Shown one piece after another: positions 2,540 through 61,200 of a DNA stretch of 64,000 bases. The first letter of the stretch is position 1. Each line of letters begins with the position of its first letter. The translations under genes were made by a program, and so were the position numbers. The notes under the pieces are model-generated. The model was not told the origin of the DNA. It did no database searches and worked only from the letters and a program-made list of their open reading frames with translations. Source of the stretch: Octopus sinensis (lineage: Eukaryota); the NCBI RefSeq assembly GCF_006345805.1, contig NC_042999.1:5084001-5148000 (forward strand). The letters are read 5' to 3'.

Positions 2540-2602
2540 CTAGAACTTAAATTCTTTATATTTCTTGGCTTTTCCACTGTCTTGTTGCTGCCGCTTCCGT
2601 TT
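2540..2602 (-). CDS. SF3B2: SF3B2 coding exon 21 (KRKRQQQDSGKAKKYKEFKF*)
   Basis: Acceptor ttttag, TAG at 2542-2540, conserved C-terminal KKYKEFKF. Confidence 0.95.
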   Translation of the reverse strand, partial: KRKRQQQDSGKAKKYKEFKF

Positions 2603-16535: not shown

Positions 16536-16568
<33 letters not shown>

Positions 16569-24173: not shown

Positions 24174-24228
<55 letters not shown>

Positions 24229-30200: not shown

Positions 30201-33200
30201 TTCTCATCATCATTGTTTAACGTCTCTTTTCCATGCTAGCATGGGTTGGACGGTTCAGCCGGGGTCTGGGAACCCAGGAGGCTGCACCAGGCTCCAGTCT
30301 GATCTGGCAGTGTTTCTACAGCTGGATGCCCTTCTTAACGCCAACCACTCCGTGAGTGTAGTGGGTGCTTTTTACGTGCCAGGCGAGGCTGGCAACGGCC
30401 ACAGAAAGCCAATCTTTCAATGATCCTTAATAGTCTTCATCTCTCTTCATGCTTTGTACTCAATCATAACTTCTGTATATCTATTAATATTCCCATTCTG
30501 GTGTCTCCCCCCATGACCAACCACAACACACATAACTGCCATCAATTCTTAAACATTTCATAAAGCCAATTCTTTTGATTTTTACCCTTCCTACTAAGAA
30601 CAAAGCACAAAATAGAGATGCTGATATCAAACTTAAGCAGAGCACAGGTGCCCTTCTTGTGGAGGTTTATGGATCATGAGATGATGAAGGATTCTCATAG
30701 TTACCCTTTGTTGCTGTTTTATTAACATCTGTTGCTGTTTCTCAGCCTCCAATAATTGCTGCTGCTGTTGAACTTTCTCCATCAATTGAAGGTATTCTCC
30801 TCCGGCAGCAGAACCAGCAGGTGATGCGTTGGGGCCGGAGGGTGGAGGCGGTGGAGGTTGTGGTAATGGTGGTTGTGGTGGTCCTTGCTGGGACATGACG
30901 GCTGCTACAGCCGCTGCTGCTGCAGCTTGCTGCTGATGCTGTTGAAGGGCCAACATCTGTTGCTGGAGAACAACTTTTTGTTGAAGTTCTTCATCCATTT
31001 CAGAAGGACCAGCCTGAAGAAAAAAAAGAAAATGTCATGAAATTAATGATTAGAAATAAAAATACTAATCTCTCTATATATAAAGCTGAAGTTATCTGTG
31101 TATGGCAGGTTTGGTAGCCTTCAACTAACACTATCTCCTCCGAGACCCTGCGGCACCAGTTGACCAAAATTGAGAGTATGATAGAAGAAGGCTTGCTCTT
31201 CCTTACGTAGAAGAAAAAATTCAAATCGGACCATGTTAACACCAAAAACGTGCTTTTTTTTCTATGAAAATCCCTATTTTTTACGATTTTTTTTTACTGC
31301 TGTGTCGCCATTTTTCGGTGTATTTCAACCAGAAAAATGTTCACTGAAAGAGAATAACAAGCTACATAATGCAAAATTTTTACTTTTCAAAAATTCCAAT
31401 TCTAAAGGGTCGAAAAGAAAACAAGCCCGAGCAACGCTGGGCTATACTGCTAGTTACTAATACAGTCATTTTGTTATTTTAAAAGAAAATAAAATGTTTT
31501 ACAAGATGGGAAATATTTTATCTGAAAACAAACGTTGAAACAAAAATGTATTAATTGTTGTCATTCATTTGTTTATATTTGGTCACAGGTTCCAGTCTTT
31601 TGCCACTTTTAGGATTGATCTTGACATCTGCCACTTTTGGTTTCCAGCAGAAATTCTTGCATTCTTTCACTTGTTTTATTCCTTCAACTGCAGTTATGGT
31701 AGGGCACTGCTATTAATAGTTTCAACTGCTACACCGATCCCCTCCATCACTACTCATTCAACTACGGTAATTATAAGAGTGGAACTGCATATTTCTCACT
31801 CTCCATCCTTGCCATTCACACTCCCTGGAACCTATTCCTTTTTTCCCCACAAACTCTCAGTATCATCCCTTCCTTCCTTAATTTCTCCTGCCCCTCTGCT
31901 ATACAACCTTCATTTTGCAAATGGCTCCCTTGCCCCTATTACCTCTCTCTTGCTCCCTCCCACCTTATGTATCTGATTTCACCCCTAACAATTTGCACCT
32001 CTTTCATGTATCACCCCTTCCCCACTCACTTCACACCATCTCCGCAGCTACCTCCAACAAATATTCATAAATGACCATACCCCCACCCATGTTCACTACC
32101 CACTCTATTTCCCTCTATCCATCTTCTACTTGCCTCTCACACTAGTCGGCGTTTGTGAGAGATGCAGCATTGAGGATGAATGAAGCCAGCTCAACCCACC
32201 CCGGGTGAATGCTGTCTCAAAAAAAAAGAAAACTTGCTCACCCACCCATACCACATCTCTTTCATTCACCTTCTTGCAACTTGAAGATACGCCCAGATAC
32301 ATCTTCACCCACCATTCTCCTTTCTCTTCCGACTGGGGTAGCCAAATATCTCCCTTACATCAAGACACTTGTCCCTCTCTCTCTATTATTAACCATCTTG
32401 CCAACAACCACCTTGAGCACCTTTTTGAGCTCCATGTGTCTAACACATGTAGGCATGCCTACAAAATCAGAAAACAGCACAGCTCGCATGACTTTCAGAA
32501 ACATTTTTTCTCACTCAGAGTTGCTGAAGCATGGAATAAACTATCTGCATCAGTTGCTAGTTGCAGAGACATTGCATCCTTTAAAACTTCCATGCTTCCT
32601 GAAATTCGCCAACACTACACTTGATATCCCCCCACCTCCATACGCATGCACACATGTATATCATGACTTATACACTGGCCACTTTCCTGACTTTTGTACA
32701 TAATTCTATAAACTATACATGCAACTGTTGTACCTCTATTCACCATTCTTCAAGTAAATCTAAAAAATACTATTATCAGATAACGAATATGCAATATGCT
32801 CACAAGAATAAAAATATATAAATTAACATACATCTTCATCCGATGCTGGATCCAGGTCCACGTCTGATCTTGAAGATGACATTTGTTGCTTCTTCTTGTT
32901 CCTGTCGGAAGAAAATTATTTAAACAAATTATATCACACTTGTCTGTAAAATAAATCCTTATCAATATGATGTTAAGTTTCAGCAGAAAATATTTATCCA
33001 GTTATATCTTTGGTTAATCTTTGGTTAATATGCAGTTGTTTAATAATATATTAATGCATCAATATGCATGGATAGCTAATATATTGATCCTGTAGATTGC
33101 TATATATTATGTATCTCAGGCCACCTTCGGTCATGGCTGACCATGGGTATCACGTCTGTCCATTTATTGTCTAGGTCGGGCCGCTCGGCTTGAGCAGCGT

Positions 33201-33634
33201 CTCCTGTGGCTATGGAGACCAATGCGAGAATGACAGTCTCGGTCGCATCTGTGTGTGGATTCTGGTCTGTCGATCCGTTACTTTGGGCTCACTTTTCTGC
33301 AGCTAACAGCCTCTCTTCACCAATCCGTAACTGTTTGAGAAGTGTGCTTTTCCACCTGGTGCAGCCCACTGCCAGGTCCTCCCAGGAGTTGATGTCGATG
33401 TTGAGAACCTTCATGTCCCTCCTGCACACATCCTTGCACCTCAACTGCAGGCAGCCCTTGTTCCTCTGTCCTGCTGCGAGTTCTCCATAGAGAATGTCTT
33501 TTGAGATTCGGCTGTCCTCCATACAGCAAACATGGCCTAGCCAGTGTAGTCGACATTGTCTCAGCAAGGTGTACATGGAAGAGAGGCCAGCATGAGTTAG
33601 GACATCAGTGTTGGTCACCTTGTCCTGTACAATG

Positions 33635-33697
<63 letters not shown>

Positions 33698-34362
33698 TAT
33701 ATATATATGTACAGGGTCGGCCTTAGGAGGTACAGGGCCCAATTGGTAACAATTTTGGTGGGCCTCTGGTTCCCAGTCAACTTGCACCAAGGTCTATAGA
33801 ATCATAAAAATATAAAAATCCAGCCACTGAAACTATGCTACCATCCAGTGCTACGTAAAAGCACTCAGTCCACACTGTAAAGTGGTGGTGTTAGGAAGGA
33901 CATCCAGATCTAGAAACCAAGCCAAAACAAACTATTTCTTATTTCTTTATTGCCCACAAGGGGCTAAACACAGAGGGGACAGACAAAGACATTAAGTCAA
34001 TTACATTGACCCCAGTGCATAACTGGTACTTAATTCATCCACTCCGAAAGGATGAAAGGCAAAGTCGACCTCGGCGGAATTTGAACTCAGAACGGTGGAC
34101 GAAATAGCACAAAGCATTTCGCCTGGCATGCTAATGTTTCTGCCAGCTCGCCAAAACAAACTATGGAACCTGGTGCAGCTCTTGATCTTCATCATCATCA
34201 TTGTTTGACCCTGGTCTTACCAGTTCCTGTCAAGCAGTCCAGCCCATTCTTTCTACAGAAAGAGGTAAATCAATTAAGGAACCCTAACTCATGTACCGAA
34301 CCAAAAACACACAGGAGGAAATAAAGCTTTTCAAATTGTACTTACCTTGAACGAGATTTCAT
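2540..34362 (-). CDS. SF3B2: Splicing factor 3B subunit 2 (SAP145/Cus1 orthologue), 21 coding exons, 1011 aa
   Basis: Exons translate to hallmark SF3B2 motifs: KLPQALEKIL, VEIEYV, PKLSKKKLKK, RPDVVEMHD.TAQDP, VPVPRHWCFK.KYLQGKRGIEKPPF, KIDIDYQKLHDAFF, PPPWLIAMQRYGPPPSYP, FGYHAGGWGKPPVDE, DMVAEHAAKQ, KKYKEFKF*. Exons (minus strand): 34362-34346, 32901-32832, 31013-30705, 29301-29169, 28648-28098, 26635-26518, 25478-25336, 23330-23203, 20642-20564, 19559-19443, 17569-17483, 16262-16188, 14893-14741, 13777-13628, 12652-12563, 10758-10651, 9403-9296, 7002-6866, 5727-5529, 4339-4139, 2602-2540. All junctions are GT-AG, phases are compatible, total 3036 nt. Confidence 0.96.
2830..2965. repeat. Compound (TATG)n/(CA)n microsatellite
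   Basis: Direct reading. Confidence 0.9.
3575..3885. repeat. ~25-bp minisatellite (ggtgccacataaaaaacacctgtgct) derived from the family-A internal unit
   Basis: About 10 degenerate units leading into a family-A core. Confidence 0.75.
4139..4339 (-). CDS. SF3B2: SF3B2 coding exon 20
   Basis: VTGMPTQKRF...EVALNPEELDMD...DMVAEHAAKQR; tttag/GTAAGA; 201 nt. Confidence 0.93.
5029..5240. mobile_element. piggyBac-type MITE (TTAA TSD, CCCTTT termini)
   Basis: TTAA 5025-5028 and 5241-5244; TIR cccttTcgttac/gtaatgaaaggg. Confidence 0.85.
5265..5472. mobile_element. Second adjacent MITE of the same family
   Basis: TTAA/TCAA flanks; same internal sequence as 5029-5240. Confidence 0.8.
5529..5727 (-). 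CDS. SF3B2: SF3B2 coding exon 19
   Basis: LVTPSGITSVPMGVETPDMIELRKKRIED...MMGSAHIYDMSA; ttcag/GTATGT. Confidence 0.95.
6542..6763. mobile_element. TTAA MITE, second family (related copy ~19675-19894)
   Basis: TTAA-CCCTTTAG ... TAAAGGG-TTAA. Confidence 0.78.
6866..7002 (-). CDS. SF3B2: SF3B2 coding exon 18
   Basis: TIVSEEEIDKTHWGELESESE...GLITPGAEG; ccag/GTATGT. Confidence 0.93.
7275..7595 (-). mobile_element. RTE-like LINE 3' fragment
   Basis: KIYGKLPPVSSLVKGRRVQFAGHCCR...RGRTLSYPDVISRDTG. Confidence 0.7.
8969..9191. mobile_element. TTAA MITE, third family
   Basis: TTAA-CCCATTAGTACCC ... GGGCACCAATGGG-TTAA. Confidence 0.72.
9296..9403 (-). CDS. SF3B2: SF3B2 coding exon 17
   Basis: SCSFGYHAGGWGKPPVDESGKPLYGDVFGTQSGEFQ; acag/GTAAAT. 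Confidence 0.96.
10651..10758 (-). CDS. SF3B2: SF3B2 coding exon 16 (PSP domain C-half)
   Basis: NSEKVPPPWLIAMQRYGPPPSYPNLKIPGLNAPIPE; ttcag/GTATGT. Confidence 0.96.
10852..11084 (-). mobile_element. tRNA-derived SINE 'family B' with 15-bp TSD
   Basis: TSD tatgcacct(g/a)aatat at 10837-10851 and 11085-11099; empty site in the duplicate. Other copies ~1760-2175(+), 11872-12100, 15385-15580, 16960-17195, 28700-28930, 33936-34149, 50027-50250 (-). Confidence 0.88.
12563..12652 (-). CDS. SF3B2: SF3B2 coding exon 15 (PSP domain N-half)
   Basis: GKEFETRLKEKKPGNLSDELRTALGMPVGP; ttcag/GTAAGT. Confidence 0.96.
13628..13777 (-). CDS. SF3B2: SF3B2 coding exon 14 (DUF382 C-part)
   Basis: EDQKTLKAKMREKVRPKLGKIDIDYQKLHDAFFRWQTKPKLTIHGDLYYE; ttccag/GTAAAT. 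Confidence 0.96.
14741..14893 (-). CDS. SF3B2: SF3B2 coding exon 13 (DUF382)
   Basis: ATRNTVPVPRHWCFKSKYLQGKRGIEKPPFELPDFIKATGIMEMRAALAEK; ttcag/GTAGGA. Confidence 0.96.
16188..16262 (-). CDS. SF3B2: SF3B2 coding exon 12
   Basis: LVSRPDVVEMHDATAQDPRLLVQLK; ctag/GTAAGT. Confidence 0.96.
16365..16772 (+). mobile_element. tRNA-derived CORE-like SINE 'family C'
   Basis: A/B-box head (ggctgtgtggtaag...ggttcagtc), CORE-like accttgggcaagtg, internal (TA/TG)n, tail gaaacaagtaaaagag. Other copies ~11230-11410, 13960-14100, 23955-24370, 34590-35055, 45328-45535, 48288-48703, 49780-49930, 56905-57220. Confidence 0.82.
17483..17569 (-). CDS. SF3B2: SF3B2 coding exon 11
   Basis: DLVADDEVPKLSKKKLKKLTRLSIAQLKQ; aacag/GTAAGT. 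Confidence 0.94.
17669..17850. mobile_element. MITE, same TTAA family
   Basis: TTAA both sides; ccttttgttac...gtaacaaaaggg. Confidence 0.82.
18557..19140 (-). mobile_element. Abundant SINE-like 'family A' element with (GAT)n tail and internal tandem units
   Basis: Core ggatgcccttcctaacgccaaccactc, end gctttccatgctagcatgggttggacg next to (CAT)n. About 30 copies, e.g. 200-497, 1037-1380, 3570-4055, 4440-4660, 13187-13480, 14305-14715, 21365-21655, 24860-25240, 25780-26236, 27690-28060, 30204-30405, 39782-40210, 42370-42683, 43156-43513, 43780-44061, 52957-53370, 53480-53875, 54296-54745. Confidence 0.85.
19443..19559 (-). CDS. SF3B2: SF3B2 coding exon 10
   Basis: IADPEKPKDFQRPEERREEEKKPEEVPIKARGLIIDDDE; gaag/GTGAGT. 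Confidence 0.88.
20564..20642 (-). CDS. SF3B2: SF3B2 coding exon 9
   Basis: (E)YVQEQLDIGHFDVNYHVFAKIFENFK; ttcag/GTATGT. Confidence 0.92.
21770..22560 (-). mobile_element. Degenerate mariner transposase fragment
   Basis: VTGDETWV motif at ~22050-22075 (gtcacaggagatgagacctgggtc) with many stops. Confidence 0.7.
23203..23330 (-). CDS. SF3B2: SF3B2 coding exon 8 (poly-Lys, NLS-like)
   Basis: NRIRKKKKKKKNKKKHPEF...DRSVEI(E); acceptor attaaag (weak), donor GTAAGT. Confidence 0.85.
23815..23950. repeat. Compound (TATG)n(TG)n(TA)n(CA)n microsatellite
   Basis: Direct reading. Confidence 0.9.
25336..25478 (-). CDS. SF3B2: SF3B2 coding exon 7 (acidic)
   Basis: (E)VPENQIRIADAEEEDDEE...DKAKE; ttttcag/GTTAGT, phase-compatible. 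Confidence 0.85.
26518..26635 (-). CDS. SF3B2: SF3B2 coding exon 6
   Basis: TSERQQKEIKLPQALEKILAFMDVRAQEIG...; gacag/GTAAGA. Confidence 0.9.
27079..27370 (+). mobile_element. tRNA-derived SINE (fourth family; fragment also at ~48060-48150)
   Basis: A box tggcccagtgg, B box ggtttcgattccc, followed by a non-tRNA body. Confidence 0.75.
28098..28648 (-). CDS. SF3B2: SF3B2 coding exon 5 (poly-proline)
   Basis: (A)QMMPIPPPPPPQ...DTKSQ; ttgcag/GTAAGT; 551 nt, phase 1 to 0. Confidence 0.88.
29169..29301 (-). CDS. SF3B2: SF3B2 coding exon 4 (Gln-rich)
   Basis: MILDQHQADEAEMMRQQQLAIIQQQQ...MQS; aacag/GTGACC. Confidence 0.82.
29394..29615. mobile_element. MITE, same TTAA family, opposite orientation
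   Basis: TTAA both sides; reverse complement of 5029-5240. Confidence 0.8.
30705..31013 (-). CDS. SF3B2: SF3B2 coding exon 3 (Gln/Ala/Pro-rich)
   Basis: AGPSEMDEELQQKVVLQQQ...LIKQQQR; ttcag/GTAACT; 309 nt. Confidence 0.85.
31069..31453 (+). mobile_element. Non-autonomous Helitron
   Basis: A|TC 5' end (TCTCTCTATATATAAAG), subterminal hairpin GCCCGAGCAACGCTGGGC, 3' CTAG|T. Confidence 0.75.
32385..32750 (+). mobile_element. CR1/L2 LINE 3' fragment
   Basis: INHLANNHLEHLF...FFSLRVAEAWNKLS; same family as 45625-46430. Confidence 0.82.
32832..32901 (-). CDS. SF3B2: SF3B2 coding exon 2
   Basis: (R)NKKKQQMSSSRSDVDLDPASDED; gacag/GTATGT; also conserved in the duplicate. Confidence 0.75.
33105..33638 (-). 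mobile_element. RTE-clade LINE 3' fragment (copied in the duplicate at ~55085-55610)
   Basis: TNTDVLTHAGLSSMYTLLRQCRLHWLGHVCCMEDSRISKDILYGEL, typical of the RTE C-terminus. Confidence 0.85.
33639..33709. repeat. (TA)n microsatellite (shorter orthologous copy 55611-55660 in the duplicate)
   Basis: Direct reading. Confidence 0.9.
33936..34149 (-). mobile_element. SINE family B with perfect 15-bp TSD
   Basis: gccaaaacaaactat at 33921-33935 and 34150-34164. Confidence 0.88.
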
Positions 34363-47960: not shown

Positions 47961-48449
47961 GTGAGTCTATTGTCTGTGCATTTTTAGAGCTTACTGTATC
48001 TGCACATTTGCCACACACAAAGACTATTCTCTCCACGTGTGTGTGTGTATATATATATATATATCACGTGACCGACCAGACTATCAGATGTTGTTACACA
48101 TCACTGGTCACAATGCATTCGCATTGTTTTAGCCTTCGAATGACGCCACCCCAAAGTACCTCAAAGCTGATCAAAATCTTATAATAAAACAGAGTTTGTG
48201 TGCGTGTGTGTGTGTGCATGTTCCTTATGGATTCGAAAACTGGGTTGCCGATTTTGACGCATGAGGTTTCAAAAGATTCAGTATGGTGCAGGAGTGGCTG
48301 TGTGGTAAGTAGCTTGTTTACCAACCACATGGTTCCGGGTTCAGTCCCATTGCATGGCACCTTGGGCAAGTGTCTCCTACTACAGCCTCGGGCCAACCAA
48401 AGCCTTGTGTGTGGATTTTGTAGAAGGAAACTGAAAGAAGCCCGTCGTA

Positions 48450-48493
<44 letters not shown>

Positions 48494-49453
48494 TGTGTGT
48501 GTTTGTGTGTCTGCATTTGTCCCCCTAGCATTGCTTGACAACCGATGCTGGTGTGTTTATGTCCCCATTACTTAGCGGTTCGGCAAAAGAGACTGATAAA
48601 ATAAGTACTGGGCTCACAAAAGAATAAGTCCCGGGGTCGAGTTGCTCGATTAAAGGCGGTGCTCCAGCATGGCCGCAGTCAAATGACTGAAACAAGTAAA
48701 AGAGATGTTTTTTGCACAACTTTTTTTTACTACAAAATAACTTCAAAAACAAGGTCAGGCCGCATAATTTTGAGGTCTTTAGCTAAGGGAGGCAACTCTC
48801 CCTGAACACACTTTAAATTACAGGGAGTCTTACCAGGGAATGAAACTTCAAAAATATACTGTCAACTTTTTTAGTATTATTTATAGTAGATAATCTTTCA
48901 AGTGAAGTATGTTTGTCTGTGTTTTCTTTAGCCCAGATTTGCCTCTGATACAGCAGACCCATCGCATAGTTTTTGGGTTTTTTTCTTCCTGAAAAACTGT
49001 AAATTTGTGTCTTTCTTTTGATGAAAGCGTTTGTTTTAGGAGAGATTTGGCTGATGAGATCTACCTAAATTTTCTACATCAAGTTCCATGTTAGTGAAAA
49101 GAAGTCACAAATCCCCTCTTTGACTCACTGCAAATTTATTCTGTTACTCAGTCAGAAATTGAAACTCCACACTGAATTACTACTACAGGTAAAATCTAGT
49201 ATGTTAATTATATTATCTCACTGCCCCCTAAAGCCTAACATACCTGACATGCCCAGGGCTCCCTGGGTGTGGGGAATACTGCCCATGTTGAAAACCTTGT
49301 TGGTAAAGGAAGTAGAATGTCAGTGACACAGGAAATGTATAATTAACAAGGAAGGTCACCAAAAATTATGAAGTCTGTCAGTTGTAAAGTTTGTGAAAGA
49401 TTTATTTGTGTTGTTGTTGTTGTTGTTGTTCATGAATAAAGAATTCTAGGAAG

Positions 49454-52400
49454 CTAATGGTAGGATGGAGGAGGTCCATATCGTTGCATAGCAATAAACC
49501 ATGGCGGGCGAACTTTCTCTGAATTCTGAAATAGGAAGAAAAAAAAAGATGATGAAATACAATCTTCAGAACATTCAGTAGGTGGGCATCTGCACCTGAA
49601 TATAATACCAAAGAGCAATGGCTCAGAACGATAAAAGAATGTGTGTGTGTGTGTGTGTGTGTGTTTCCCCTTGTGTTTGTCTTCTATAACAGCTTCACAA
49701 CCAGTGTTGGTTTGTTTACATCCTCAAGTTCAGCAAAAGGAAACTGACAGGAGAAGAACCAGGTTTAAGGAGAGCTTCCCAAACACATGGTTCTGGCTTC
49801 AGTCCCACTGCATGGCACCTTGGGCAAGTGTCTTCTACTAAAGCCTTGGGCCGACCAAAGCCTTGTGAGTGGATTTGGGAGACAGAAACTGAAAGAATGT
49901 GTTGTCTATATGTCCTTATATATATATAAGTACTGAAGGTCAGATGGTGGGGCATGCACAGTTGTTGATATATTCCTGGGTCCTCTCAGACGACCCATCA
50001 AGTAGAGTCCCGGTCAGTCCTCCTCTTTACTACCCACAAGGGGCTAAACGCAGAGGGGGACAAACAAGGACAGACAAATGTATTAAGTCGATTATATCGA
50101 CCCCAGTGCGTAACTGGTACTTATTTAATCGACCCCAAAAGGATGAAAGGCAAAGTCGACCTTGATGGAATTTGAACTCAGAACGTAGCGGCAGACGAAA
50201 TATGGCTATGCATTTCGCATGGCGTGCTAACGATTCTGCTAGTTCGCCGTCCCAATACCATCTGACAACTGGTGTTGATGTGTTTACATCCCCTTAACTT
50301 AGTGGTTTGGCAAAATGGCAAAAAAAGAAGACAATAGAATGAATACAAAGCTTAAAAAAGAAAGAAAAAGGTTCAACGTTTTGCACATTTCAATATAGTT
50401 TTCTAGTTATAAGGTGTGATGATGAGGTAGAGAGTATGATAAAGGTGGGAGAAAGGAGGAGAACAAGGAAGAAGATGGATAAGGAAAGAAATGACGTAGA
50501 ATAAAGCTTGAAGGAGCACTTAATCATTTGACCAACAAGCTGTAATTAATGAGCCAACTTAATCAGAATTGAACTGCAGCTGCACAAAAGCTAAAATAAT
50601 ACTCTTGATAATGGGATAAGTTGGATTGTTACAAACAGACTCTTGAAAAATAGAAATTGGTTAATAAATATATGTAGGAATACATAAATGAATACATTAT
50701 AATAACTTACTGGACCGACTGGCATGCCCAGGGCTGTTCTCAGTTCATCAGATAGATCACCAGGTTTTGTCTCTACATCAAGTATCTCAATTTTTTTACT
50801 CTGAAATATCAAGTCATAAGAAGACATATATAGATAGATATACACACACACAGTACAAAAATTATAGATGACATGAAGACAAGGTAAAACAAAAATAAAC
50901 ACAAAATGTCTATTAGTTTTACGCTCAGTAAAAATAAATGGAAAATCTTTTGTGTTTCAAGCTAATGCTTTTGTAACAGAAAGAATAGATGAGGAGAGAA
51001 CAAAAAAATGGAGAGAAAAAGAATGTATTTCAATGAGATGGTCACTTAGAGGAAAGTAGGAAAAGGTTACTTGAGGTGTGAGTAGCAAAGGTGACAACTG
51101 TGAGAGGTGAGTTGAAGTGTAGGTGGTTAAGGGAACATTTCTGAATCTGGCACATGTGTGTGTGTGTGATGCTTATATTTAAGTACACAACATAAAACTC
51201 CATATATTGCATTACACTCCAAAACGATGACTGAGAAGAAAATTTGAGTTATTTCACTGGAGACTCATCAGCAATAGAAGTCATAGAGTACAAGACAAGT
51301 GAATGTTTAAATTATAGATTTATAACATCATCATCATCGTTTAATGTCCGCTTTCCATGCTGTCATGGGTTGAACAATTTGACTGAGGACTGGCGAACCA
51401 GATGGCTGCACCAGGCTCCAGTCTTGATTTGGCAGAGTTTCTACAGCTGGATGCCCTTCCTATTCTTATAAATGTTTCAGTGACTGTTATAATAATGAAA
51501 TTATTGTATACAGTGCTCAGGTGCACCACAACTTGTCAAAAAGTGCGAATAAAGCATATGCAGTAATGTACAAATGTCTGGGAAGTGAACAATGTATGAG
51601 TCAGATACATGCTTGCGTGTGTATGGAGGGGAGAAAATCAGGTGTAGTGTTGTCGAATCTCAGGAAGCATGGAAGTTTTGAAGGATGCAGTGCTCTGACA
51701 ACTAACAACTGATGCCGGCAGTTTGTTCCATGCTTCAGCAACTCTCAGCGTGAAAAAATGTTTCCTGAAGTCATGGGAGCTGTGCTGTTTTCTGACTTTG
51801 TAAACATGTCCACGGGTGTTAGACAGGTGGAGTTTGAAAAGGTGCTCAGAGTTATTGTTTGTAAGATGGTTAATAATGTAATGATTACATAAGATTAACC
51901 GTATACAATTTTTTACCCAGACGTCTGCTTTCCATGCTAGCATGGGTTGGACGATTTGACTGAGGTCTGGCAAACCAGATGGCTGCACCAGGCTCCAATC
52001 TTGATCTGGCAGAGTTTCTACAGCTGGATGCCCTTCCTAATGCCAACAACTCGCACAAGGGCCAGTCAGGCGGTACTGGCAACAACCTCGCTCGAATGAT
52101 AATATTCAATTCAAAGATACTCGACTTCATTGTATTCCTTTCATGTTTGCTTTTAGGCAGAGAAAATGTAAAACATTTAAAAAAAAAAAAAAGACTTCAA
52201 CTTCTGATTTGATGAAAAATTAAAAAACGTAAAACAAAAAACATGAAACAAAATGTCAGGCTTTACCTTGAAAAGGTTCAATAATGGATCGGTTGGCCTT
52301 CGGTAGAAAGCATCAAAAATCTCGTCAGGTGTAAGAGGCACATACCCAGGTATCTTTGCTTTCAAGGTTTTCTGATATTCCTGGAAAATACAATCCATGA

Positions 52401-55400
52401 AAATGCTACATAAAACTGTAGAGAAGAATATAATCCCCCAATAAAGTGAACAGTAACAGTCTCGTTACGGGTATAATTCTTTTCTATCTATTAATTTCAT
52501 CTTTAATACTGGTTTTAAATTTTGACACAGGGCCAGCAGCTTCACAGGTGGGGCTAAGTTGAATATTTCAAATTCCATTGCCCAAATCCCTTGCAAAGCC
52601 TTGGTCAGCCTGGAGCTACAGTAGAAGGCACTTGCTCAAGGTGCCTTGCAATGGCACTGAACCCAAAACCACATTGCTGGGAAGTGAACATCTTAACCGT
52701 ACAACTATGCCTATATATCATCATATAAAGTCCATTTTCCATTTTGGCATTGGTTGGATGGCTGGACAGGAGCTGGCAAGGTCAGGGACCACACCCGGTT
52801 CCATAGTCTGTTTTCAGCCTAGTTTCTAATGCTCTTCCTTAATGCCAACCTCGTTAAAAAGTGTACTGGGTGTTTTTTACATGGCACCATCACCAGTGCT
52901 TTTCATGAGACACCATGGCCACAGCTTTTTATGTGGTACGATCACCATTGCTTTTTCATCATCATCATCGTCGTTTAACATCTGCTTTCCATGCTAGCAT
53001 GGGTTGGACGATTTGACTGAGGACTGGTGAACCAGATGGCTGCACCAGGCTCCAATCTGATCTGGCAGAGATTCTACAGCTGGATGCCCTTCCTAACGCC
53101 AACCACTCTGAGAATGTAGTGGGTGCTTTTACGAGCCACCAGCACGGGGGCCAGTCAGGCAGTACTGGCAACGACCTCACTCAAATGTTTTTTTATGTTC
53201 CACCTGCACAAGTGCCAGTAAGGTGACGATGGTAACGATCATGCTCAAATGGTGCGTTTTATGTGCCACCGGCACAGAAGCCAGTTAGCCACTCTGGCAA
53301 CGATCACACTTGGATGGTGCTCTTAGTGCCCCATTAGCACGGATGCCTGCTCTTAGCGCCCCACTAGCACTATATGTAAATAAATTGTAGGCCTACCTTT
53401 TTTAAATATAATTTAAAAAGAGAAGAAGGTCAAACAGAAACATTCCTGGAGACAAACCACAACAAACAAATAAAATTGGTTTGCTAAGGGTACCATACAA
53501 GCAAGATCTTTGCCAGAGCAACAAGCTGGCCTCCGTGCCGATGGCACATAAAAAACACCATTCAAGCATGATCGTTACCTGCGTCGCCTTACTAGCACTT
53601 GTGCCGGTGGGCTGGCTCCTGTGCAGGTGGCACATAAAAAGCACCATTTGAGCCTGGCTGTTGCCAGTACTGCCTGACTGGCCCTTGTGCCAGTAGCATG
53701 TAAACGCACCCACTACACTTTCAGAGTGGTTGGCATTAGGAAGGGCATCCAGCTGTAGAAACTCTGCCAGATCAGATTGGAGCCTGGTGCAGCCATCTGG
53801 CTCGCCAGACCTCAGTCAAAATCGTCCAATCCATGCTAGCATGGAAAGCAGACACTAAACGATGATGATGATGATTGTAAGTGAGAATCACAGAAAATTA
53901 TCTAAGCAAAATGAGAAGAAATTTACATGCCAGTGCCATGTAGAAGCACCCATGCCTAATGCCACATGCAGTGCACCTGTACTGATGCTACATAAAAACA
54001 CCCAGTACATTGGTGTTAGGAAGAGCATCCAGCTGTAGAAACCATGCCAAAACAAGATGACTGGTGCCTGGTGCAGCCCTCCAGCTATTATCAAACTGTC
54101 CAACCCATACCAGCAAGGAAAGCGGACATTAAATGATGTTTCCTGAAATTCGCCAAAACTACACCTGATATCCCCCCACCTCCATACGCATGCACACATG
54201 TATATCATGACTCATACACTGTTCACTTTCCTGACTTTTGTACATAATTCTATAAACTATAAATGCAACTCTGTTGTACCTCTATTCACCATTCTTCATC
54301 ATCATCATCATCATCATCGTTTAGCATCCACTTTCCATGCTGGCATGGGTTGGACGGTGCAACTGGGGTCTGGGAAGCCAGAAGGCTGCACCAGGCCCAG
54401 TCTGATCTGGAAATGTTTCTACGGCTGGATGCCATTCCTAACACCAACCACTTTGTAAGTGTAGTGGGTGCTTTTTACGTGCCACCGGCACAGGTGCCAG
54501 ACGAGGCTGGCAAATGGCCATGGTCGGATGGTGCTTTTTACGTGCCACCGGCACGGAGGCCAGGCCAGGCTGGCAAACAGCCACGATCGGATGGTGTTTG
54601 TTACGTGCCACCAGCACGGAAGCCAGTCAGGGCGGCACTGGCAACGGCCACGTTCGGATGGTTCTCTTATGTGCCACCAGCACTGGTATCACAGCTACAA
54701 TTTCCATTCATGTTGATCGATTTTGATTTTTGAATTTTTGATTTTAAAATACTATTATCAGATAACGAATATGCAATATGCTCACAAGAATAAAAATATA
54801 TAAATTAACATACATCATCATCCGATGCTGGATCCAGGTCCACGTCTGATCTTGAAGATGACATTTGTTGCTTCTTCTTGTTCCTGTCGGAAGAAAATTA
54901 TTTAAACAAATTATATCACACTTGTCTGTAAAATAAATCCTTATCAATATGATGTTAAGTTTCAGCAGAAAATATTTATCTTTGGTTAATCTTTGGTTAA
55001 TCTGCAGTTGTTTAATAATATATTAATGCATCAATATGCATGGATAGCTAATATATTGATCCTGTAGATTGCTATATATTATGTATCTCAGGCCACCTTC
55101 GGTCATGGCTGACCATGGGTATCACGTCTGTCCATTTATTGTCCAGGTCGGGCCGCTCGGCTTGAGCAGCGCCTCCTGTGGCTATGGAGACCAATGCGAG
55201 AATGACAGTCTCGGTCGCATCTGTGTGTGGATTCTGGTCTGTCGATCCGTTACTTTGGGCTCACTTTTCTGCAGCTAACAGCCTCTCTTCACCGATCCGT
55301 AGCTGTTTGAGAAGTGTGCTTTTCCACCTGGTGCAGCCCACTGCCAGGTCCTCCCAGGAGTTGATGTCGATGTTGAGCACCTTCATGTCACTGCTGCACA

Positions 55401-55606
55401 CGTCCTTGCACCTCAGCTGCAGGCAGCCCTTGTTCCTCTGTCCTGCTCCGAGTTCTCCATAGAGAATGTCTTTTGAGATTCGGCTGTCCTCCATACAGCA
55501 AACATGGCCTAGCCAGTGTAGTCGACATTGTCTCAGCAAGGTGTACATGGAAGAGAGGCCAGCATGAGTTAGGACATCAGTGTTGGTCACCTTGTCCTGT
55601 ACAATG

Positions 55607-55663
<57 letters not shown>

Positions 55664-56666
55664 GGTCGGCCTTAGGAGGTGCAGGACCCAATTGGTAACA
55701 ATTTTGGTGGGCCTCTGGTTCCCAGTCAACTTGCACCAAGGTCTATAGAATCATAAAAATATAAAAATCCAGCCATTGAAACTATGCTACCATCCAGTGC
55801 TACGTAAAAGCACTCAGTCCACACTGTAAAGTGGTGGTGTTAGGAAGGACATCCAGCCACAAAAAACATGCCAAACCAGACAGGTATCAGACGTTGCCCC
55901 TGGCTTATTGGCCCCTGTCAAACCTTCCAACCGATGTCAGCATGGAAAATGGACGTTAAATGATGATGTTTGTGACCTCCTTTAATTGCTGAGAATCTAA
56001 GTAATTAGCAAACCTTCCTCCCCTGACACACAGCAGTGATCAGACTTCCATTCAATGCAGAGTGAACTCTGTTGCTTTGGCTGTTTATATAACACTAGCA
56101 AGCTGTGTATCACTACAATACAAGTACAGTTAACACTCACACAGTGTCTTGCTTGGAAATCTCACACTAAACGCTTCGCCTAATCTTCTATGCTTGGAAA
56201 TAAACTACTCCATAACATCTTCTCTGGAGACACCCAATGGAGCTTTCCAGTTTGGGAGAGCCCACAGTGGCTATGGACAATGCTCACCTCCTCAAACTGA
56301 AATTAAAATGATTCCCTGAGATTTATTAACTCTTAACATCTTGTTGAAGATTTTAAAGTTAAAAAAACCTCAATCCTGTAATGATTTTGTTCCAGAACAG
56401 AGATGTGGGGATGTTAATGCGTTGTTGCATGAGAAGTTGACTGAACTGCACAAAATAGAAGTCTTTTACAATGAATCATTTTTTTATGACAATACAAATA
56501 CAAAATATAACATACATGAATTATTAAAAAGCACTGGTGCTGGTTCCACATAAAAAGTACAGAAAGAGGTAAATCAATTAAGGAACCCTAACTCATGCAC
56601 TGAACCAAAAACACACAGGAGGAAATAAAGCTTTTCAAGCTGTATTTACCTTGAACGAGATCTCAT
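49454..56666 (-). CDS. Putative SF3B2-derived mini-gene, 5 coding exons, 120 aa (alternative: unprocessed pseudogene)
   Basis: Exons 56666-56650, 54883-54814, 52380-52267, 50800-50711, 49525-49454; all splice sites intact, frame continuous: MRSRSRNKKKQQMSSSRSDVDLDPASDDD-EYQKTLKAKIPGYVPLTPDEIFDAFYRRPTDPLLNLFK-SKKIEILDVETKPGDLSDELRTALGMPVGP-NSEKVRPPWFIAMQRYGPPPSYH*; AATAAA at 49406-49401. Confidence 0.55.
51480..51880 (-). mobile_element. CR1/L2 LINE 3' fragment inserted in the duplicate only
   Basis: NHLTNNNSEHLFKLHLSNTRGHVYKVRK...WNKLPASV; absent at the parent site (~13.3 kb). Confidence 0.82.
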
Positions 56667-57486
56667 ATTTGTATTTCAAATGTGATCCTAGTTGACCAAA
56701 ATGGACAATTCTGAAAGGTCAAGAAAAAAAAATTTTAATCAATAACGCTTTAGTTTTAGAAAGATTTTAGTTTCATGTACCATACCTTTTCCTCTAATTC
56801 CTTTGTGCTCTGAATTCTATTCTAATCTAATCTAATCAGAATCAACTTAGCAGTTAATCTTTTCAGGTTCAATAAAATAAACACTTATATCGAAATGGGC
56901 AATCACATGGCTCCAGGTTCAATCCCACTGCGTGGCACCTTGAGCAAGTATCTTCTACTATAGCGTTGGGTTGACCAAAGTCTTGTGAGTGATTTTGGTA
57001 AACGAAAACAGAACCAAGCCCATCACACACAAGTGTGTCCCCTATTACCGCTCGACAACCGGCGTTGGTGCGTTTACGTCCCATAACTTAGCTGTTCGGC
57101 AAAAGTCACTAACAGAATAAGTACCAGGCTTAAGTACTGGGATCGATTCATTCGACTAAAAATTCTTCGAGGTAGTACCCCAGCATGGCCACGGCCTAAT
57201 GGCGGAAGCAAGTAAAAGATAGAAAGATGGAATGAGGAAAGCAAGGCAATTACCGCAAAACAATATTCTCCAGAATGCGAAGATGGCGAAAGAGAATGAG
57301 AAGAAAGGAGAAAATATTGTCAGAGGTGGAACTACATAACACCATTATTTCTGCTGGTTTTTAAGCATAATTAGATCTTGAAATCAGAAAGTTTGTTGTT
57401 TATGTAATGTTGCTTATAATTAGACAATTCTAAGTTATCTAAATAAACATCTATCTCCTTGCAAGACACGTTTTTAAGATGACATT

Positions 57487-58002: not shown

Positions 58003-58294
58003 AATAATAATAATACTAATTTATTCTTTTTATTGGCCACAAGGGCTGACACACATGATTGGTAAACATAAAGGGACAAAACAGGATGAAAGGTTACAAA
58101 GGGTTTTGTCCGTTTTTGAAAAATCCGTGTAAACAACAGTGTAACAATGAAAATATTTAACAACGAAAAACTCCCAAAAGGGGGAGGCGTTTCGAAAGGT
58201 TCCTGGTGGAAAAAAACCCATAAAAGCCAACGGGAGCCTAGTCAAAAAAGTGGGGTAGAGGGCCCCTTTTCTCCTTTTATATTACCTTTTTGAA

Positions 58295-61200
58295 TCACAG
58301 GCGAAACCTGAGAACTGGTCCACAATTCACCCACCTTTCATAAAACTTGCTATCGGACAGCACTCTCCTCTCTAACCTCATCTTCCTTTTCAAGTGAAAC
58401 TTGAAAAAGTTGATGAGGCCTTGACCAAAGCGGAAAGTGTCTGACTTTAGCCCTTTCAAACGGGTCCACCATACCACCTTTCGCCACAGCCACTAGGCAC
58501 AAGAAAACGGCCTCGCCCTCCTTCTTAAAGGAGGTCGGCGGGGCAATCTTCACTATGGATTCGGCCGATAGTCGGATCCGTCCTACACATGACAGTAGCT
58601 GTTCGACATAAACCCATAGTTCAGCAATACTCGGGCACTGGACGAGTGCATGCAGAACGGTTTCGTCGTCCTGGCAACACCTCGGGCAGGCCCGGCTGAC
58701 GGCACTTCCGTGCCGGTAGAGTTTATCCCGAACAGGCAGAGCCCCTCGGTAGCACTGCCAGGCGAGCGACCTCTGGAAATTATCCATCGGCCCTGGCCCG
58801 AAAGTCCTTCCAAACAGACCGCTCAGTTCGTTATCTTCAACGCCTAGAGTTTCCCCGAGAACGTCGTCGCATTTTTTCTCCACTAACCCTCTATAGAACG
58901 CTAGAGTGGAGCTGAAACCGATCGCATTGCCCGCTTGGCGGAGGGCGGAGAGAGCCTGACGGCACTCGAGGTCCCAAGTGCCCTTTCTCGGTCTACGCTT
59001 GATCCAGGTCTGCAGCTCTGTCAAAGAGACGAGCTGCGGAAAGTCGCGTCTGACAAAAGACGACCACACCTGTTCACCGTCAAGGAAACGCTTGAGATGT
59101 CGCAGCCTGAGCGCATCAGCAACCACGGCATTCCAAGGCCTCCGTTCAGCGGTCGTTGACAGCAGATGGATCGCCTGACCAGTGGCACCTGACCCTTCCA
59201 CAAAAAGTCGAAGAGCAGGCGTACCAGCTTGGCCAACCAGCGGTCGGGACAAGTAGATGATGGATGCGATGTACGCATTCGCCACCTCCGCTCGACCTTT
59301 CAGGGACAGCTTCCTCTCAGCCCATTTCTGGGTGAGATGTGCCACCCTGCTCATCACCTCTTCCCAGTTTTTATCCACCTGGAGGTCCGGACCGAACCAG
59401 ACCCTGAGCAGTTTAACGGGTCCGTCTGTCCAGCGCCCTACGACGCTGTTGGACGGCATGGGCTTGCCTCTCCAGGTGCCCAGTTGCAAGCCCACAGACT
59501 TTTCCGCGTTAATCTTTGCCCCTGTCACCGCTTCGTACTGGTTTAGCGTCTCGCCAATCAGGCCAATGTGCCTGTGGCTCGACACCACCACGGTGACGTC
59601 GTCGGCATAAGCAGACACGCTGTTTCCGCCTCCTAGATCGCGCGGGATACCCCTCAAAGCCTCCAACTTGCGCAGTAATGGCTCGAGAGTCAAAATGTAC
59701 AAAAGGGAGGAGAGAGGGCATCCTTGGCGGACCGAACGCGAGATGTCGAACGGTTCCGAAAGGTGACCGTTCACCCGTATCACCGAGCAGATGTTGCTGT
59801 ATAGAGCAGCTATCCACCCGCGGAAAACTGGACCGAAACCGGCTGCCTTGAGGACAGCCGCCAGGTACCGATGGTCGACCCTATCGAAGGCTTTACTCTG
59901 ATCCAAGTTGATCAAAGCCCCACCCGCGCCAGCGTCGTTACCCACCCTCTCTATGATGTAGTGCATGAGATGGAGGTTGTCGTGTATCGACCTGGTCGGC
60001 ACGGCGCATGTCTGCGTCTTGCCGACCAGCTTGTCCACGACAAGCGCCAATCTCTTGGCTAGCACCTTGGCCAAAATTTTCAACTCTGCATTGAGCAGAG
60101 TGATGGGCCGGAAATTCCCTATAACGTCCCCCTTGTTTGGGTCCTTCTTTAGCAAAGCCACCACCCCTCGACAGACAAAAGCAGGAATTCTCCCGTTTTG
60201 CTGCCAGTTGCAGTAGACGTTTGCCAACAGGTCCGCAAACAAGTCTGGCATTGAAAAGTAAAGCTCGTAGGGCAGACCATCCAAACCCGGCGATCTACCT
60301 CTCGTGCAACTCTTCATCGCTTCCTGTACTTCCCAGGCAGATATCGGTCCTTCGCAGCACTCTGCCTCACTGTCCGAGAGTTGCGGTAGGCCGTCCAGGT
60401 ACACACCGAAGTCTGCACCGTTGTCCGTTCAACCGCTCGTCCCAAACAGTTGAGCAAAGTGCCGCTGAAGCACCGTACACATCTGCTTCGGTTCGGTAAC
60501 CTCGCGCCCGTTCTGGTCCACCAAAGACCAAATGGTTGCTCTGTTGCCTCGCTTCGCCTCCGCCACGCGGGCCCATCGAGCGGCTCTAGTCCCCTCCCCG
60601 CTTAGCGAACGTGCCTTAGCTCTGACAACGCAACCTTCGTGTTTGGCGTCGAAGTGTTGGTCGAGGGCCAACCTTGCCGCCAACACGTCGGTCGCGATGC
60701 CAGTCTCAAGAGCCTCGTCTAGTTTCTTAACTAAATCCCGCTCTCTCTTCCTACGTTCAATAGCTAGAGTCTTACTATACCTAATCGACTCTACTCTAAT
60801 TGCTCTCTTGAGGGCAAACCACCAGTTGTTGTTGATGATTGTCCCCGTGAGCGCCCGCTTAACTAGTAAACTAATCCGGTCTCTGTAAGCTTTGCACGCC
60901 GTTAACGACGCGTTCAGCTTCCAGTAGCCGGGTCTCTGTCTATGTAGCCTATCTAAGTCGACCGTACAGATCACTAATTTGTGCTCCGTATATTCGACTA
61001 GGTGGAATTGTGGACACCCTACGCTGTCCTTATCCGCTGGCCTACAAAACACTCTATCTAAGTACGATCTAGACGAGCCGATGCGGTTTGTCCAAGTCCA
61101 CATTGGCACATTCGGGTTGTCTAGTCGAAACCTGTCAGACAGCTGAAAGCGGCCGAGTAGATTGGCGAGGCTCTTGCACCCTCCCCCTCTCCTATCAGAC

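What the first reader, a model, noticed from the sequence alone, without database searches (positions are those of the whole stretch)
50765..52380. Exons diverged far more than the surrounding introns, without breaking the frame
Seen: parent exon 14 (EDQKTLKAKMREKVRPKLGKIDIDYQKLHDAFFRWQTKPKLTIHGDLYYE, 150 nt) became EYQKTLKAKIPGYVPLTPDEIFDAFYRRPTDPLLNLFK (114 nt), barely alignable after KAK. The first 12 codons of exon 15 carry 11 substitutions in 36 nt and change 8 residues (GKEFETRLKEKK > SKKIEILDVETK). Flanking introns differ by only about 10% by eye, and exon 2 differs by 1 nt. Inference: coding change exceeding intronic change with no stop is the pattern expected from positive selection or neofunctionalisation of the linker next to the PSP module.
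Basis: partly seen in the sequence, partly recalled or inferred. Interest (0 to 1): 0.75.

Follow-up and report, generated by a model that had tools for sequence, protein, structure and literature searches.

The report
Truncated octopus SF3B2 copy, rewritten patch
A young, heavily truncated extra copy of the essential splicing-factor gene SF3B2 in Octopus had about 50 neighbouring codons rewritten almost entirely by amino-acid-changing mutations. The introns around them barely changed, which points to a short burst of selection on the protein rather than ordinary decay.

Summary
The window is Octopus sinensis. It holds SF3B2 (minus strand, 34362-2540) and, 13 kb upstream, a partial copy (57486-48152) with exons 1, 2, 14', 15' and a truncated 16'. 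These splice in frame to 120 aa, which is XP_029633543.1.

Formal alignment gives 6.2% non-coding divergence between the copies. Exon 14' nt 30-114 and exon 15' nt 1-36 each show 30.6%, plus two in-frame deletions. The two patches are contiguous in the mRNA.

Polarised with O. bimaculoides and the O. vulgaris copy, 34 changes fall on the duplicate's stem branch where 2.2 are expected. The tip branches run at neutral rate.

Codon positions are 13/18/3, and 27 codons changed with none changed synonymously. The tract is also rich in transversions. This rejects a codon-blind mutation cluster and an old donor, and no donor was found.

The tract equals human SF3B2 553-605: the C-terminal third of DUF382 plus the linker. 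It stops exactly where the SF3B4-binding helix begins, and that helix is kept.

Caveats: O. vulgaris carries a stop codon inside the tract, the copy lacks most of SF3B2, and expression is untested. An episodic burst of positive selection is the best reading. Neofunctionalisation is not shown.

The parts
2540..34362 (-). Parent SF3B2 gene, coding span (21 coding exons). It encodes a protein identical to O. sinensis SF3B2 (P0001, 1011 aa).
   Evidence: tblastn of P0001 against the window. ATG and exon 1 donor found.
13628..13777 (-). Parent exon 14 (EDQKTLKAK...DLYYE).
12563..12652 (-). Parent exon 15 (GKEFETRLKEKKPGNLSDELRTALGMPVGP).
48152..57486 (-). Partial SF3B2 duplicate. It equals parent 35322-32592 (promoter, exons 1-2), a SINE-rich filler, a 73-nt piece of intron 10, and parent 14745-9469 (last 5 nt of exon 13 through intron 16).
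   Evidence: Self-BLAST chain; junction sequences.
56650..56666 (-). Duplicate exon 1 coding part (ATGAGATCTCGTTCAAG|GTAAAT; K2R).
54814..54883 (-). Duplicate exon 2'. It differs from the parent by 1 nt (E>D) and ends in phase 0.
52267..52380 (-). Duplicate exon 14' (114 nt, EYQKTLKAKIPGYVPLTPDEIFDAFYRRPTDPLLNLFK).
52267..52351 (-). Rewritten tract, part A (exon 14' nt 30-114). 24 duplicate-lineage substitutions plus in-frame deletions of 21 and 15 nt.
50765..50800 (-). Rewritten tract, part B (exon 15' nt 1-36). 10 duplicate-lineage substitutions. It follows part A directly in the mRNA.
50711..50800 (-). Duplicate exon 15'. Beyond the tract it keeps PGDLSDELRTALGMPVGP, which corresponds to the SF3B4-RRM1-binding helix (human 607-616).
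   Evidence: PMC5275738
49454..49525 (-). Duplicate exon 16' coding part with stop (NSEKVRPPWFIAMQRYGPPPSYH*). A 132-nt deletion (parent 10560-10691) removed the exon's 3' end and its donor.
52340..52345 (-). New GTATGT inside exon 14' (CCTGG|GTATGT), created by three of the tract's substitutions. The O. vulgaris gene model uses it as a splice donor.
   Evidence: P0122 sequence compared with the DNA.
52300..52302 (-). Codon CGA (Arg) of exon 14'. It is TGA in the O. vulgaris orthologous copy.
53404..53476 (-). Fragment of parent intron 10 (17860-17929), joined directly to the last 5 nt of exon 13 plus its donor (AAAAG|GTAGG).
58353..60428 (-). Non-LTR retrotransposon ORF (RVT_1 + zf-RVT). Its 3' end abuts the duplicate's 5' boundary at about 57486. 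This is context, not part of the gene.

Best explanation
An SF3B2 copy arose in the common ancestor of O. sinensis and O. vulgaris, after that lineage split from O. bimaculoides. It covered the promoter through intron 16 and landed 13 kb upstream of the parent. Internal deletions removed exons 3-13 and the end of exon 16.

Because all the retained introns are phase 0, exons 1-2-14'-15'-16' still splice in frame. The product is a 120-aa protein. Its N-terminus is basic. It carries an orphaned C-terminal third of the DUF382 domain and the start of the SF3B4(SF3b49)-binding module: the helix equivalent to human 607-616, the conserved Trp, and PSP positions 1-36 of 46.

During a short interval (about 1.8% neutral divergence), selection on the peptide replaced 27 of 41 aligned codons of the orphaned half-domain plus linker (human SF3B2 553-605) and deleted 12 more. 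This removed 8 of 14 Lys/Arg and added prolines. The rewriting stopped exactly at the SF3B4-binding helix. After that the tract evolved no faster than neutral.

Shown: the architecture, the excess, its branch, and its codon-level pattern.

Inferred: that the cause was positive selection; that the product is a small SF3B4-binding protein which has lost the SF3B1-contacting part and so acts as a decoy or modulator; and that it is or was expressed from the retained housekeeping promoter.
For: - Architecture and in-frame model. The model is identical to XP_029633543.1.
- Excess on the duplicate's stem branch only: 34 changes in 121 aligned nt against 41 in 2227 non-coding columns (Poisson P = 2.6e-28). 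Tips: O. sinensis 0, O. vulgaris 1. Parent: 3, all synonymous.
- Codon positions 13/18/3. Under a neutral simulation with the local spectrum, P(position 3 <= 3) = 3e-4. 27 codons changed with 0 synonymous, P = 0.007. NG86: S=24.8, N=95.2, Sd=0, Nd=33, Fisher P = 2e-4. Nonsynonymous rate against the intron stem rate: odds ratio 28, P = 1e-28.
- Ts:Tv is 13:21 in the tract against 93:38 in introns, P = 6e-4.
- The two patches abut the same intron. That intron and the rest of exons 14-16 are at background.
- The same tract is present in an independent assembly of O. vulgaris.
- The tract maps to human 553-605 and to DUF382 588-713 / PSP 722-772 of P0001.
- Human 598-631 binds SF3b49 RRM1 through helix 607-616 (PMC5275738). 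The Cus1 minimal binding domain starts at the equivalent point and needs the conserved Trp (PMC5435868; 5lsb alignment). Both are retained in the copy.
- 3'-truncated duplicates that keep the promoter were all transcribed in the human-specific set studied and can antagonise the parent (PMC6169893).
Against: - O. vulgaris has a nonsense codon (CGA>TGA) inside the tract. Its only annotated ORF needs a predicted internal donor and a shifted acceptor.
- Outside the tract the stem branch shows 6 nonsynonymous: 1 synonymous change, so there is no sign of constraint.
- A roughly 15-20-fold acceleration is extreme.
- Six codons carry 2 changes each. Multi-nucleotide mutations are known to inflate tests for selection.
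- No expression or protein evidence could be obtained.
- The copy lacks the last third of the Cus1-type SF3B4-binding domain, and P>R and L>F changes flank the Trp.
- AlphaFold gives no confident structure (mean pLDDT 50).
- Only one outgroup sequence and one sequence per species were available.
Confidence: 0.55

Rival explanations
1. Selection to disarm a harmful fragment. The truncated copy, driven by a housekeeping promoter, first made a fragment that competed with full-length SF3B2 for its partners. Any radical change in the leftover half-domain was mildly beneficial. Many such changes fixed quickly, after which the locus drifted towards a pseudogene, as the stop in O. vulgaris would suggest. 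This is still positive selection, but for loss of function rather than gain.
For: - The changes are radical: 18 of 34 fall at codon position 2, basic residues are lost, and prolines and deletions appear.
- The burst was episodic and followed by neutral-rate evolution and a nonsense codon in O. vulgaris.
- There is no constraint elsewhere in the ORF.
- Truncated paralogues can act as dominant negatives from birth (PMC6169893).
Against: - A single nonsense, frameshift, start-codon or promoter mutation would disarm the fragment in one step. Thirty-four steps with the frame kept open and the SF3B4-binding helix untouched are hard to explain this way.
- Both deletions are in frame.
Confidence: 0.2
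2. Non-adaptive mutational event in a pseudogene. One or a few clustered multi-nucleotide events rewrote the tract, for example error-prone repair synthesis, short template switches, or RNA/cDNA-templated repair. The open frame is luck.
For: - Both patches have an identical 30.6% divergence, and the tract is contiguous in the mRNA, as a single cDNA-templated event would give.
- Six codons have 2 changes each and the tract is transversion-rich.
- The frame stays open in 23% of neutral simulations.
- The locus is a truncated remnant next to a LINE reverse-transcriptase ORF.
- There is a stop in O. vulgaris.
- A 12-mer of the rewritten exon 15' core recurs 1.7 kb downstream.
Against: - A codon-blind process should hit third positions and make synonymous changes. 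Observed 3/34 at position 3 (P = 3e-4) and 0 synonymous codons of 27 (P = 0.007). The joint result, together with no stop, occurred in 0 of 20,000 simulations.
- Genomic clusters should not stop at both edges of a 1.4-kb intron.
- A conversion tract copied from cDNA across the junction should have deleted the intron.
- About one 12-mer match is expected by chance.
Confidence: 0.13
3. Gene conversion or capture from an unseen donor. The tract was copied from another SF3B2-derived sequence elsewhere in the genome, such as an old retrocopy or a divergent paralogue.
For: The boundaries are sharp, both patches have equal divergence, and the tract is mRNA-contiguous. The octopus genome outside the window could not be searched.
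Against: - Third codon positions are almost unchanged relative to the parent (3 of about 40). An old paralogue or a neutrally decaying retrocopy is therefore excluded.
- The only proteins sharing 5-residue words with the tract are the locus's own products, XP_029633543.1 and CAI9718980.1. phmmer of exon 14' against 1.84 billion representatives gave no hit.
- No k-mer donor was found in the window.
- Any donor would itself have to be a young SF3B2 derivative that underwent the same nonsynonymous burst.
Confidence: 0.07

Closest known systems
NPIP / morpheus gene family on primate LCR16a segmental duplications
   Same: Young segmental duplicates in which particular coding exons diverged far more than the surrounding introns, through an excess of amino-acid replacements. 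The change came in a burst on one lineage while an ORF was maintained (PMC7419210).
   Different: NPIP is a multi-copy, dispersed, expressed family with repeated bouts of selection and whole-gene models. Here there is one tandem, heavily truncated copy of an essential spliceosome gene, one burst, no evidence of expression, and a stop codon in the sister species.
SRGAP2C (also ARHGAP11B, CHRFAM7A): 3'-truncated human-specific duplicates
   Same: A partial duplicate that keeps the parental promoter and 5' exons and encodes a truncated protein lacking domains. It acquired missense or splice changes after duplication that modified its behaviour, and it can antagonise the parent (PMC6169893).
   Different: SRGAP2C carries a handful of missense changes, not 27 replaced codons in a 41-codon tract. 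Its expression and antagonism are shown experimentally. The octopus copy also has a large internal deletion (exons 3-13).
SF3B2 / SAP145 / Cus1 proper
   Same: Derived from it. The copy keeps exons 1-2, the helix that binds SF3B4 RRM1, and PSP positions 1-36 of 46.
   Different: No DUF382 match. It lacks exons 3-13 and 17-21 and the end of the SF3B4-binding domain. It cannot be a functional SF3b subunit.
ZCCHC8 Pro-rich region bound to RBM7 RRM, and HIV-1 Vpr interference with the SF3b49-SF3b145 pairing
   Same: Precedents for a short PSP-type peptide binding the helical face of an RRM, and for a small protein disturbing the SF3B4-SF3B2 pairing (PMC5435868; PMC5275738).
   Different: These are analogies for the proposed decoy mechanism only. 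No binding was tested here.

Membership tests
SF3B2/SAP145/Cus1 splicing-factor family (functional subunit) | DUF382 domain (PF04037) | tested here: not met
   Pfam scan: the parent P0001 matches DUF382 at 588-713 (E = 1e-58). The duplicate products P0121 and P0122 have no DUF382 match.
SF3B2/SAP145/Cus1 splicing-factor family (functional subunit) | PSP domain (PF04046) | tested here: met
   P0121 residues 79-119 match PSP profile positions 1-36 of 46 at 58 bits (cut-off 19.6). The match is truncated at the C-terminal end.
SF3B2/SAP145/Cus1 splicing-factor family (functional subunit) | Complete SF3B4/Hsh49-binding domain (Cus1 290-350 equivalent, with the conserved Trp) | tested here: inconclusive
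   The helix (human 607-616) and the Trp are present. The copy ends about 23 residues short of the minimal Cus1 domain, and P>R and L>F changes flank the Trp. The human fragment 598-631 alone binds RRM1. Binding was not testable here.
SF3B2/SAP145/Cus1 splicing-factor family (functional subunit) | Full-length architecture (N-terminal region, Pro-rich region, C-terminal region) | tested here: not met
   Exons 3-13 and 17-21 are absent from the duplicate.
Unprocessed pseudogene evolving neutrally | Disabling lesion in the reading frame | tested here: inconclusive
   O. sinensis: the 120-codon frame is open. O. vulgaris: CGA>TGA in exon 14'.
Unprocessed pseudogene evolving neutrally | Substitutions blind to codon position, at the local neutral rate | tested here: not met
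   Tract: 15-fold excess, positions 13/18/3, 0 synonymous. Outside the tract and on the tip branches the rates are compatible with neutrality.
Positively selected young duplicate (NPIP-type exon hyperdivergence) | Exonic divergence significantly above intronic divergence | tested here: met
   30.6% against 6.2% pairwise. 34 changes against 2.2 expected on the stem branch.
Positively selected young duplicate (NPIP-type exon hyperdivergence) | Nonsynonymous rate significantly above the synonymous/neutral rate | tested here: met
   Nd=33, Sd=0, Fisher P = 2e-4. Odds ratio 28 against the intron rate. No likelihood branch-site test with a multi-nucleotide model could be run.
Positively selected young duplicate (NPIP-type exon hyperdivergence) | Transcribed and translated, with the ORF maintained across species | not testable with these tools
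   Only gene predictions exist (XP_029633543.1, CAI9718980.1). No transcript-derived entries were found. The ORF of the long form is broken in O. vulgaris.
Gene-conversion or templated-replacement tract | An identifiable donor sequence | tested here: not met
   No donor in the window or in the protein collections. L001 and L002 were not scanned for one. The rest of the octopus genome was not searchable.

The most novel reading that the evidence does not exclude
Octopus of the vulgaris/sinensis lineage evolved a small protein derived from a spliceosome subunit. It came from a truncated SF3B2 copy whose leftover half-domain was adaptively remodelled while the SF3B4-RRM1-binding helix was kept. 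The result is a lineage-specific titrator or modulator of SF3b assembly, and so of branch-site usage, in an animal group already known for unusual RNA processing.
Probability: 0.15. Interest if true: 0.7.

Novelty: new member of a known kind. Interest (0 to 1): 0.5.

Why it matters
SF3B2 residues 553-605 are almost identical between octopus and human. In this copy the same residues were replaced nearly wholesale within a sliver of evolutionary time, with no synonymous change. That is one of the cleanest small-scale signatures of selection-driven rewriting one can see without population data.

If the product is made, it would show how truncation followed by rapid remodelling of an orphaned half-domain turns a piece of an essential machine into a new small regulator. 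It would also give a natural SF3B4-binding peptide to test.

If it is not made, the locus is a warning. A striking dN>>dS pattern, and an NCBI protein model, can sit on a decaying remnant.

Tried and rejected
- Old divergent paralogue or retrocopy as the source. Rejected because third positions are nearly unchanged.
- DGR-like adenine-specific mutagenesis. Only 16 of 34 changes start from A in an A-rich tract.
- ADAR-type A>G hardwiring. Only 4 of 34 changes are A>G.
- APOBEC-type C>T / G>A. Only 8 of 34.
- An overlapping ORF on the other strand or frame that could impose the periodicity. None beyond the exon's own frame.
- Local template-switch donor. One 12-mer (ACTTGATGTAGA at 49073 and at the homologous 10157) matches the exon 15' core, but about one such match is expected by chance.
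- phmmer of the exon 14' peptide against 1.84 billion representatives: 0 hits.
- AlphaFold2 of the 120-aa protein: mean pLDDT 50, with the tract below 50. Uninformative, and not used.
- Test for present-day constraint. There is 1 coding difference in 363 nt between the O. sinensis and O. vulgaris copies, against 2.27% in the collinear non-coding sequence. However, exon-flanking introns are themselves only about 1% diverged by eye, and the one difference is a stop codon. I call this inconclusive.
- The presence of the copy in O. bimaculoides could not be checked. The 10-kb upstream flank of L002 ends at the equivalent of window 45186, short of the copy. Dating rests on divergence only: 5-6% between paralogues against about 15% between species.
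Full report
**What is in the window.**
A self-comparison and tblastn with the best database hit show that the window is Octopus DNA. The parent protein is identical to O. sinensis SF3B2 (P0001, 1011 aa). The parent gene lies on the minus strand, from the ATG at 34362 to the last coding exon at 2540, with 21 coding exons.

A partial copy lies 13 kb upstream in the same orientation (57486-48152). It is made of four pieces:
- parent 35322-32592 (about 0.9 kb of promoter, exon 1, exon 2, and part of intron 2);
- a SINE-rich filler;
- 73 nt of intron 10;
- parent 14745-9469 (the last 5 nt of exon 13 with its donor, then exons 14, 15 and 16 and their introns).

A 132-nt deletion removes the end of exon 16 and creates a stop after PPPSYH. 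Exons 3-13 and 17-21 are absent.

All retained junctions are phase 0, and the ATG and donors are intact. Exons 1-2-14'-15'-16' therefore read through as 120 codons. This model is identical to the NCBI prediction XP_029633543.1, 'splicing factor 3B subunit 2-like [Octopus sinensis]'.

**Checking the observation.**
The quoted peptides are at the stated coordinates. On a formal alignment of the 5.3-kb duplicated segment, non-exonic divergence is 6.2% (216/3512). Exon 14 nt 30-150 shows 26 mismatches in 85 aligned positions (30.6%) plus in-frame deletions of 21 and 15 nt. Exon 15 nt 1-36 shows 11/36 (30.6%). The binomial probabilities are 4.5e-12 and 6.8e-6.

The first 29 nt of exon 14, the last 54 nt of exon 15, and exon 16' are at background: 2/29, 3/54 and 4/67. 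Exon 2 differs by one base.

**Which lineage changed, and when.**
I fetched the O. vulgaris copy of the duplicate (L001) and the O. bimaculoides SF3B2 locus (L002), and aligned all four sequences. The parsimony counts in 2227 clean non-coding columns are:

| Branch | Changes |
|---|---|
| O. bimaculoides / root | 277 |
| Parent since duplication | 53 |
| Duplicate stem (before the O. sinensis / O. vulgaris split) | 41 (1.84%) |
| O. sinensis duplicate tip | 21 |
| O. vulgaris duplicate tip | 16 |

The copy is therefore younger than the O. bimaculoides split and older than the sinensis-vulgaris split.

In the 121 aligned positions of the tract, the stem carries 34 changes where 2.2 are expected (Poisson P = 2.6e-28). 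The parent carries 3, all synonymous. The O. sinensis tip carries 0 and the O. vulgaris tip carries 1. So the rewriting was a burst of about 15 times the neutral rate, and it ended before the two species separated. The three densest 36-nt windows of stem changes in the whole alignment are exactly the exon pieces.

**Mutation cluster, foreign donor, or selection?**
The 34 changes fall 13, 18 and 3 on codon positions 1, 2 and 3. Twenty-seven codons changed and none changed synonymously. Nei-Gojobori counts are S=24.8, N=95.2, Sd=0, Nd=33 (Fisher P = 2e-4). Against the intron stem rate the odds ratio is 28 (P = 1e-28).

I simulated 34 random substitutions on the ancestral tract, using the substitution spectrum of the neighbouring introns:
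- three or fewer third-position hits occurred in 0.03% of runs;
- no synonymous codon change occurred in 0.7% of runs;
- the observed combination, together with no stop, occurred in none of 20,000 runs.

By contrast, 'no stop' alone occurred in 23% of runs, so it is weak evidence by itself. The tract is also transversion-rich: 13:21 against 93:38 in introns (P = 6e-4).

Each alternative fails on specific grounds:
- An old paralogue or decayed retrocopy as donor is excluded, because third positions are almost untouched.
- A codon-blind cluster is disfavoured by the periodicity and by the way change stops at both edges of a 1.4-kb intron.
- Change types do not fit adenine-specific, ADAR-type or APOBEC-type processes.
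- No donor was found in the window, among proteins sharing 5-mers (only the locus's own two predictions), or by phmmer against 1.84 billion representatives.
- No competing ORF overlaps the exon.

The most economical reading is selection on the encoded peptide.

**What was rewritten.**
The tract is P0001 residues 670-722, which equals human SF3B2 553-605. That is the C-terminal third of DUF382 (588-713) plus the linker up to the first residue of PSP (722-772). It is more than a 'linker'.

These residues are nearly identical between octopus and human. In the copy, 14 Lys/Arg became 6, prolines rose from 2 to 5, and net charge went from +5 to -1.

The tract ends exactly where the SF3B4 (SF3b49) binding module begins. 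Human fragment 598-631 binds SF3b49 RRM1 through a helix at 607-616 (PMC5275738). The yeast Cus1 minimal binding domain (290-350) starts at the equivalent point and needs a conserved Trp (PMC5435868; 5lsb alignment). The copy keeps PGDLSDELRTALGMPVGPNSEKVRPPW with only N>D, P>R and, just after it, L>F.

SF3B2 in the spliceosome lies extended along the C-terminal HEAT repeats of SF3B1 (PMC5835773). Whether residues 553-605 make those contacts I could not check.

My proposal is inference, not a result. Once exons 3-13 were lost, the remaining half of DUF382 was an orphan, and it was remodelled under selection while the self-contained SF3B4-binding helix was retained. This would give a small protein able to bind SF3B4 without joining SF3b.

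**Evidence against a working gene.**
- In O. vulgaris the tract contains CGA>TGA. The O. vulgaris prediction CAI9718980.1 (93 aa) avoids it by using an internal GTATGT (52340-52345), created by three of the tract's substitutions, and an acceptor shifted by 2 nt.
- Outside the tract, the stem branch has 6 nonsynonymous and 1 synonymous change in 79 codons. That gives no sign of constraint.
- Between the two species the exons differ at 1 of 363 positions, against 2.27% in collinear non-coding DNA. This might hint at constraint. But exon-flanking introns are only about 1% diverged and the single difference is the stop, so I treat it as inconclusive.
- There is no transcript evidence in the collections I could query.
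- AlphaFold is uninformative.

**Comparison with known cases.**
The pattern of exons far more diverged than introns through replacement changes, in a burst, in a young segmental duplicate, is that of NPIP/morpheus (PMC7419210). The architecture resembles SRGAP2C and ARHGAP11B: a 3'-truncated copy that keeps the promoter and was modified after duplication (PMC6169893). The locus is not a functional SF3B2. DUF382 is not detected and most of the protein is missing.

I found no paper that mentions SF3B2 together with octopus. I rate it a new member of a known kind. It is notable for the intensity and sharpness of the signal and for the parent being a core spliceosome subunit. It is limited by the lack of any evidence of function and by the stop codon in the sister species.

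**Verdict.**
Selection on the peptide is the best explanation of the pattern (about 0.55, plus about 0.2 for the 'disarming' variant). Neofunctionalisation is unproven.

Noticed in passing
window 57482-60428 (-), boundary at 57486: A non-LTR retrotransposon with an intact 692-aa RT ORF (RVT_1 + zf-RVT) ends exactly at the 5' boundary of the duplicate, on the same strand. The same arrangement is seen in O. vulgaris. With the patchwork structure of the copy (promoter-exon 2, SINEs, intron 10 scrap, exon 13 tail to intron 16), this raises the possibility that the copy arose by LINE-associated transduction or template switching rather than simple tandem duplication. No poly(A) is present at the 3' boundary (48152).
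   Followed up: partly
window 52340-52345 (-) and 50799-50800 (-): Three substitutions of the tract create a consensus-like donor (CCTGG|GTATGT) inside exon 14'. The first substitution of exon 15' (G>A) creates a tandem acceptor (CAGAG). Together they allow an in-frame 93-aa isoform that skips most of the rewritten exon 14' part. This is the O. vulgaris gene model.
   Followed up: partly
window 50756-50758 (-), codon AAT>GAT in exon 15': The N>D change in the copy turns the octopus helix PGNLSDELR into PGDLSDELR, the sequence of human SF3B2 607-614.
   Followed up: no
window 49073-49084 and 10157-10168 (-): The 12-mer ACTTGATGTAGA, which forms the most scrambled core of the rewritten exon 15' stretch, also occurs in intron 16 of both the parent and the copy, about 1.7 kb downstream. 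About one such match is expected by chance.
   Followed up: yes
parent exons 14-16 (13628-13777, 12563-12652, 10651-10758): Since the duplication the parent accumulated 7 synonymous changes in about 105 synonymous sites of these exons (plus exons 1-2). That is higher than its intron rate of 2.4%. The numbers are small and this was not tested.
   Followed up: no
L002 12167-12227 versus window 32832-32901: O. bimaculoides exon 2 lacks 9 nt (QMS) present in O. sinensis. The O. bimaculoides protein model (902 aa) also lacks about 100 residues of the Pro-rich exon 5 present in the O. sinensis model. This could be annotation or real length variation.
   Followed up: no
whole window, e.g. 1037-1381, 13187-13481, 18552-18896, 42390-42687, 52961-53303, 53507-53872, 54307-54644: More than 25 copies of a roughly 300-bp SINE-like repeat (75-93% identity, both orientations) and several other interspersed families. 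SINE copies sit at the internal deletion junctions of the duplicate (53476-54136). They also account for the only non-exonic 'hot' windows in the parent-duplicate alignment (13320-13450).
   Followed up: partly
window 57482-58203 and 63278-63999: A direct repeat of about 720 nt at 75% identity, probably two copies of the 3' part of the same LINE family.
   Followed up: no
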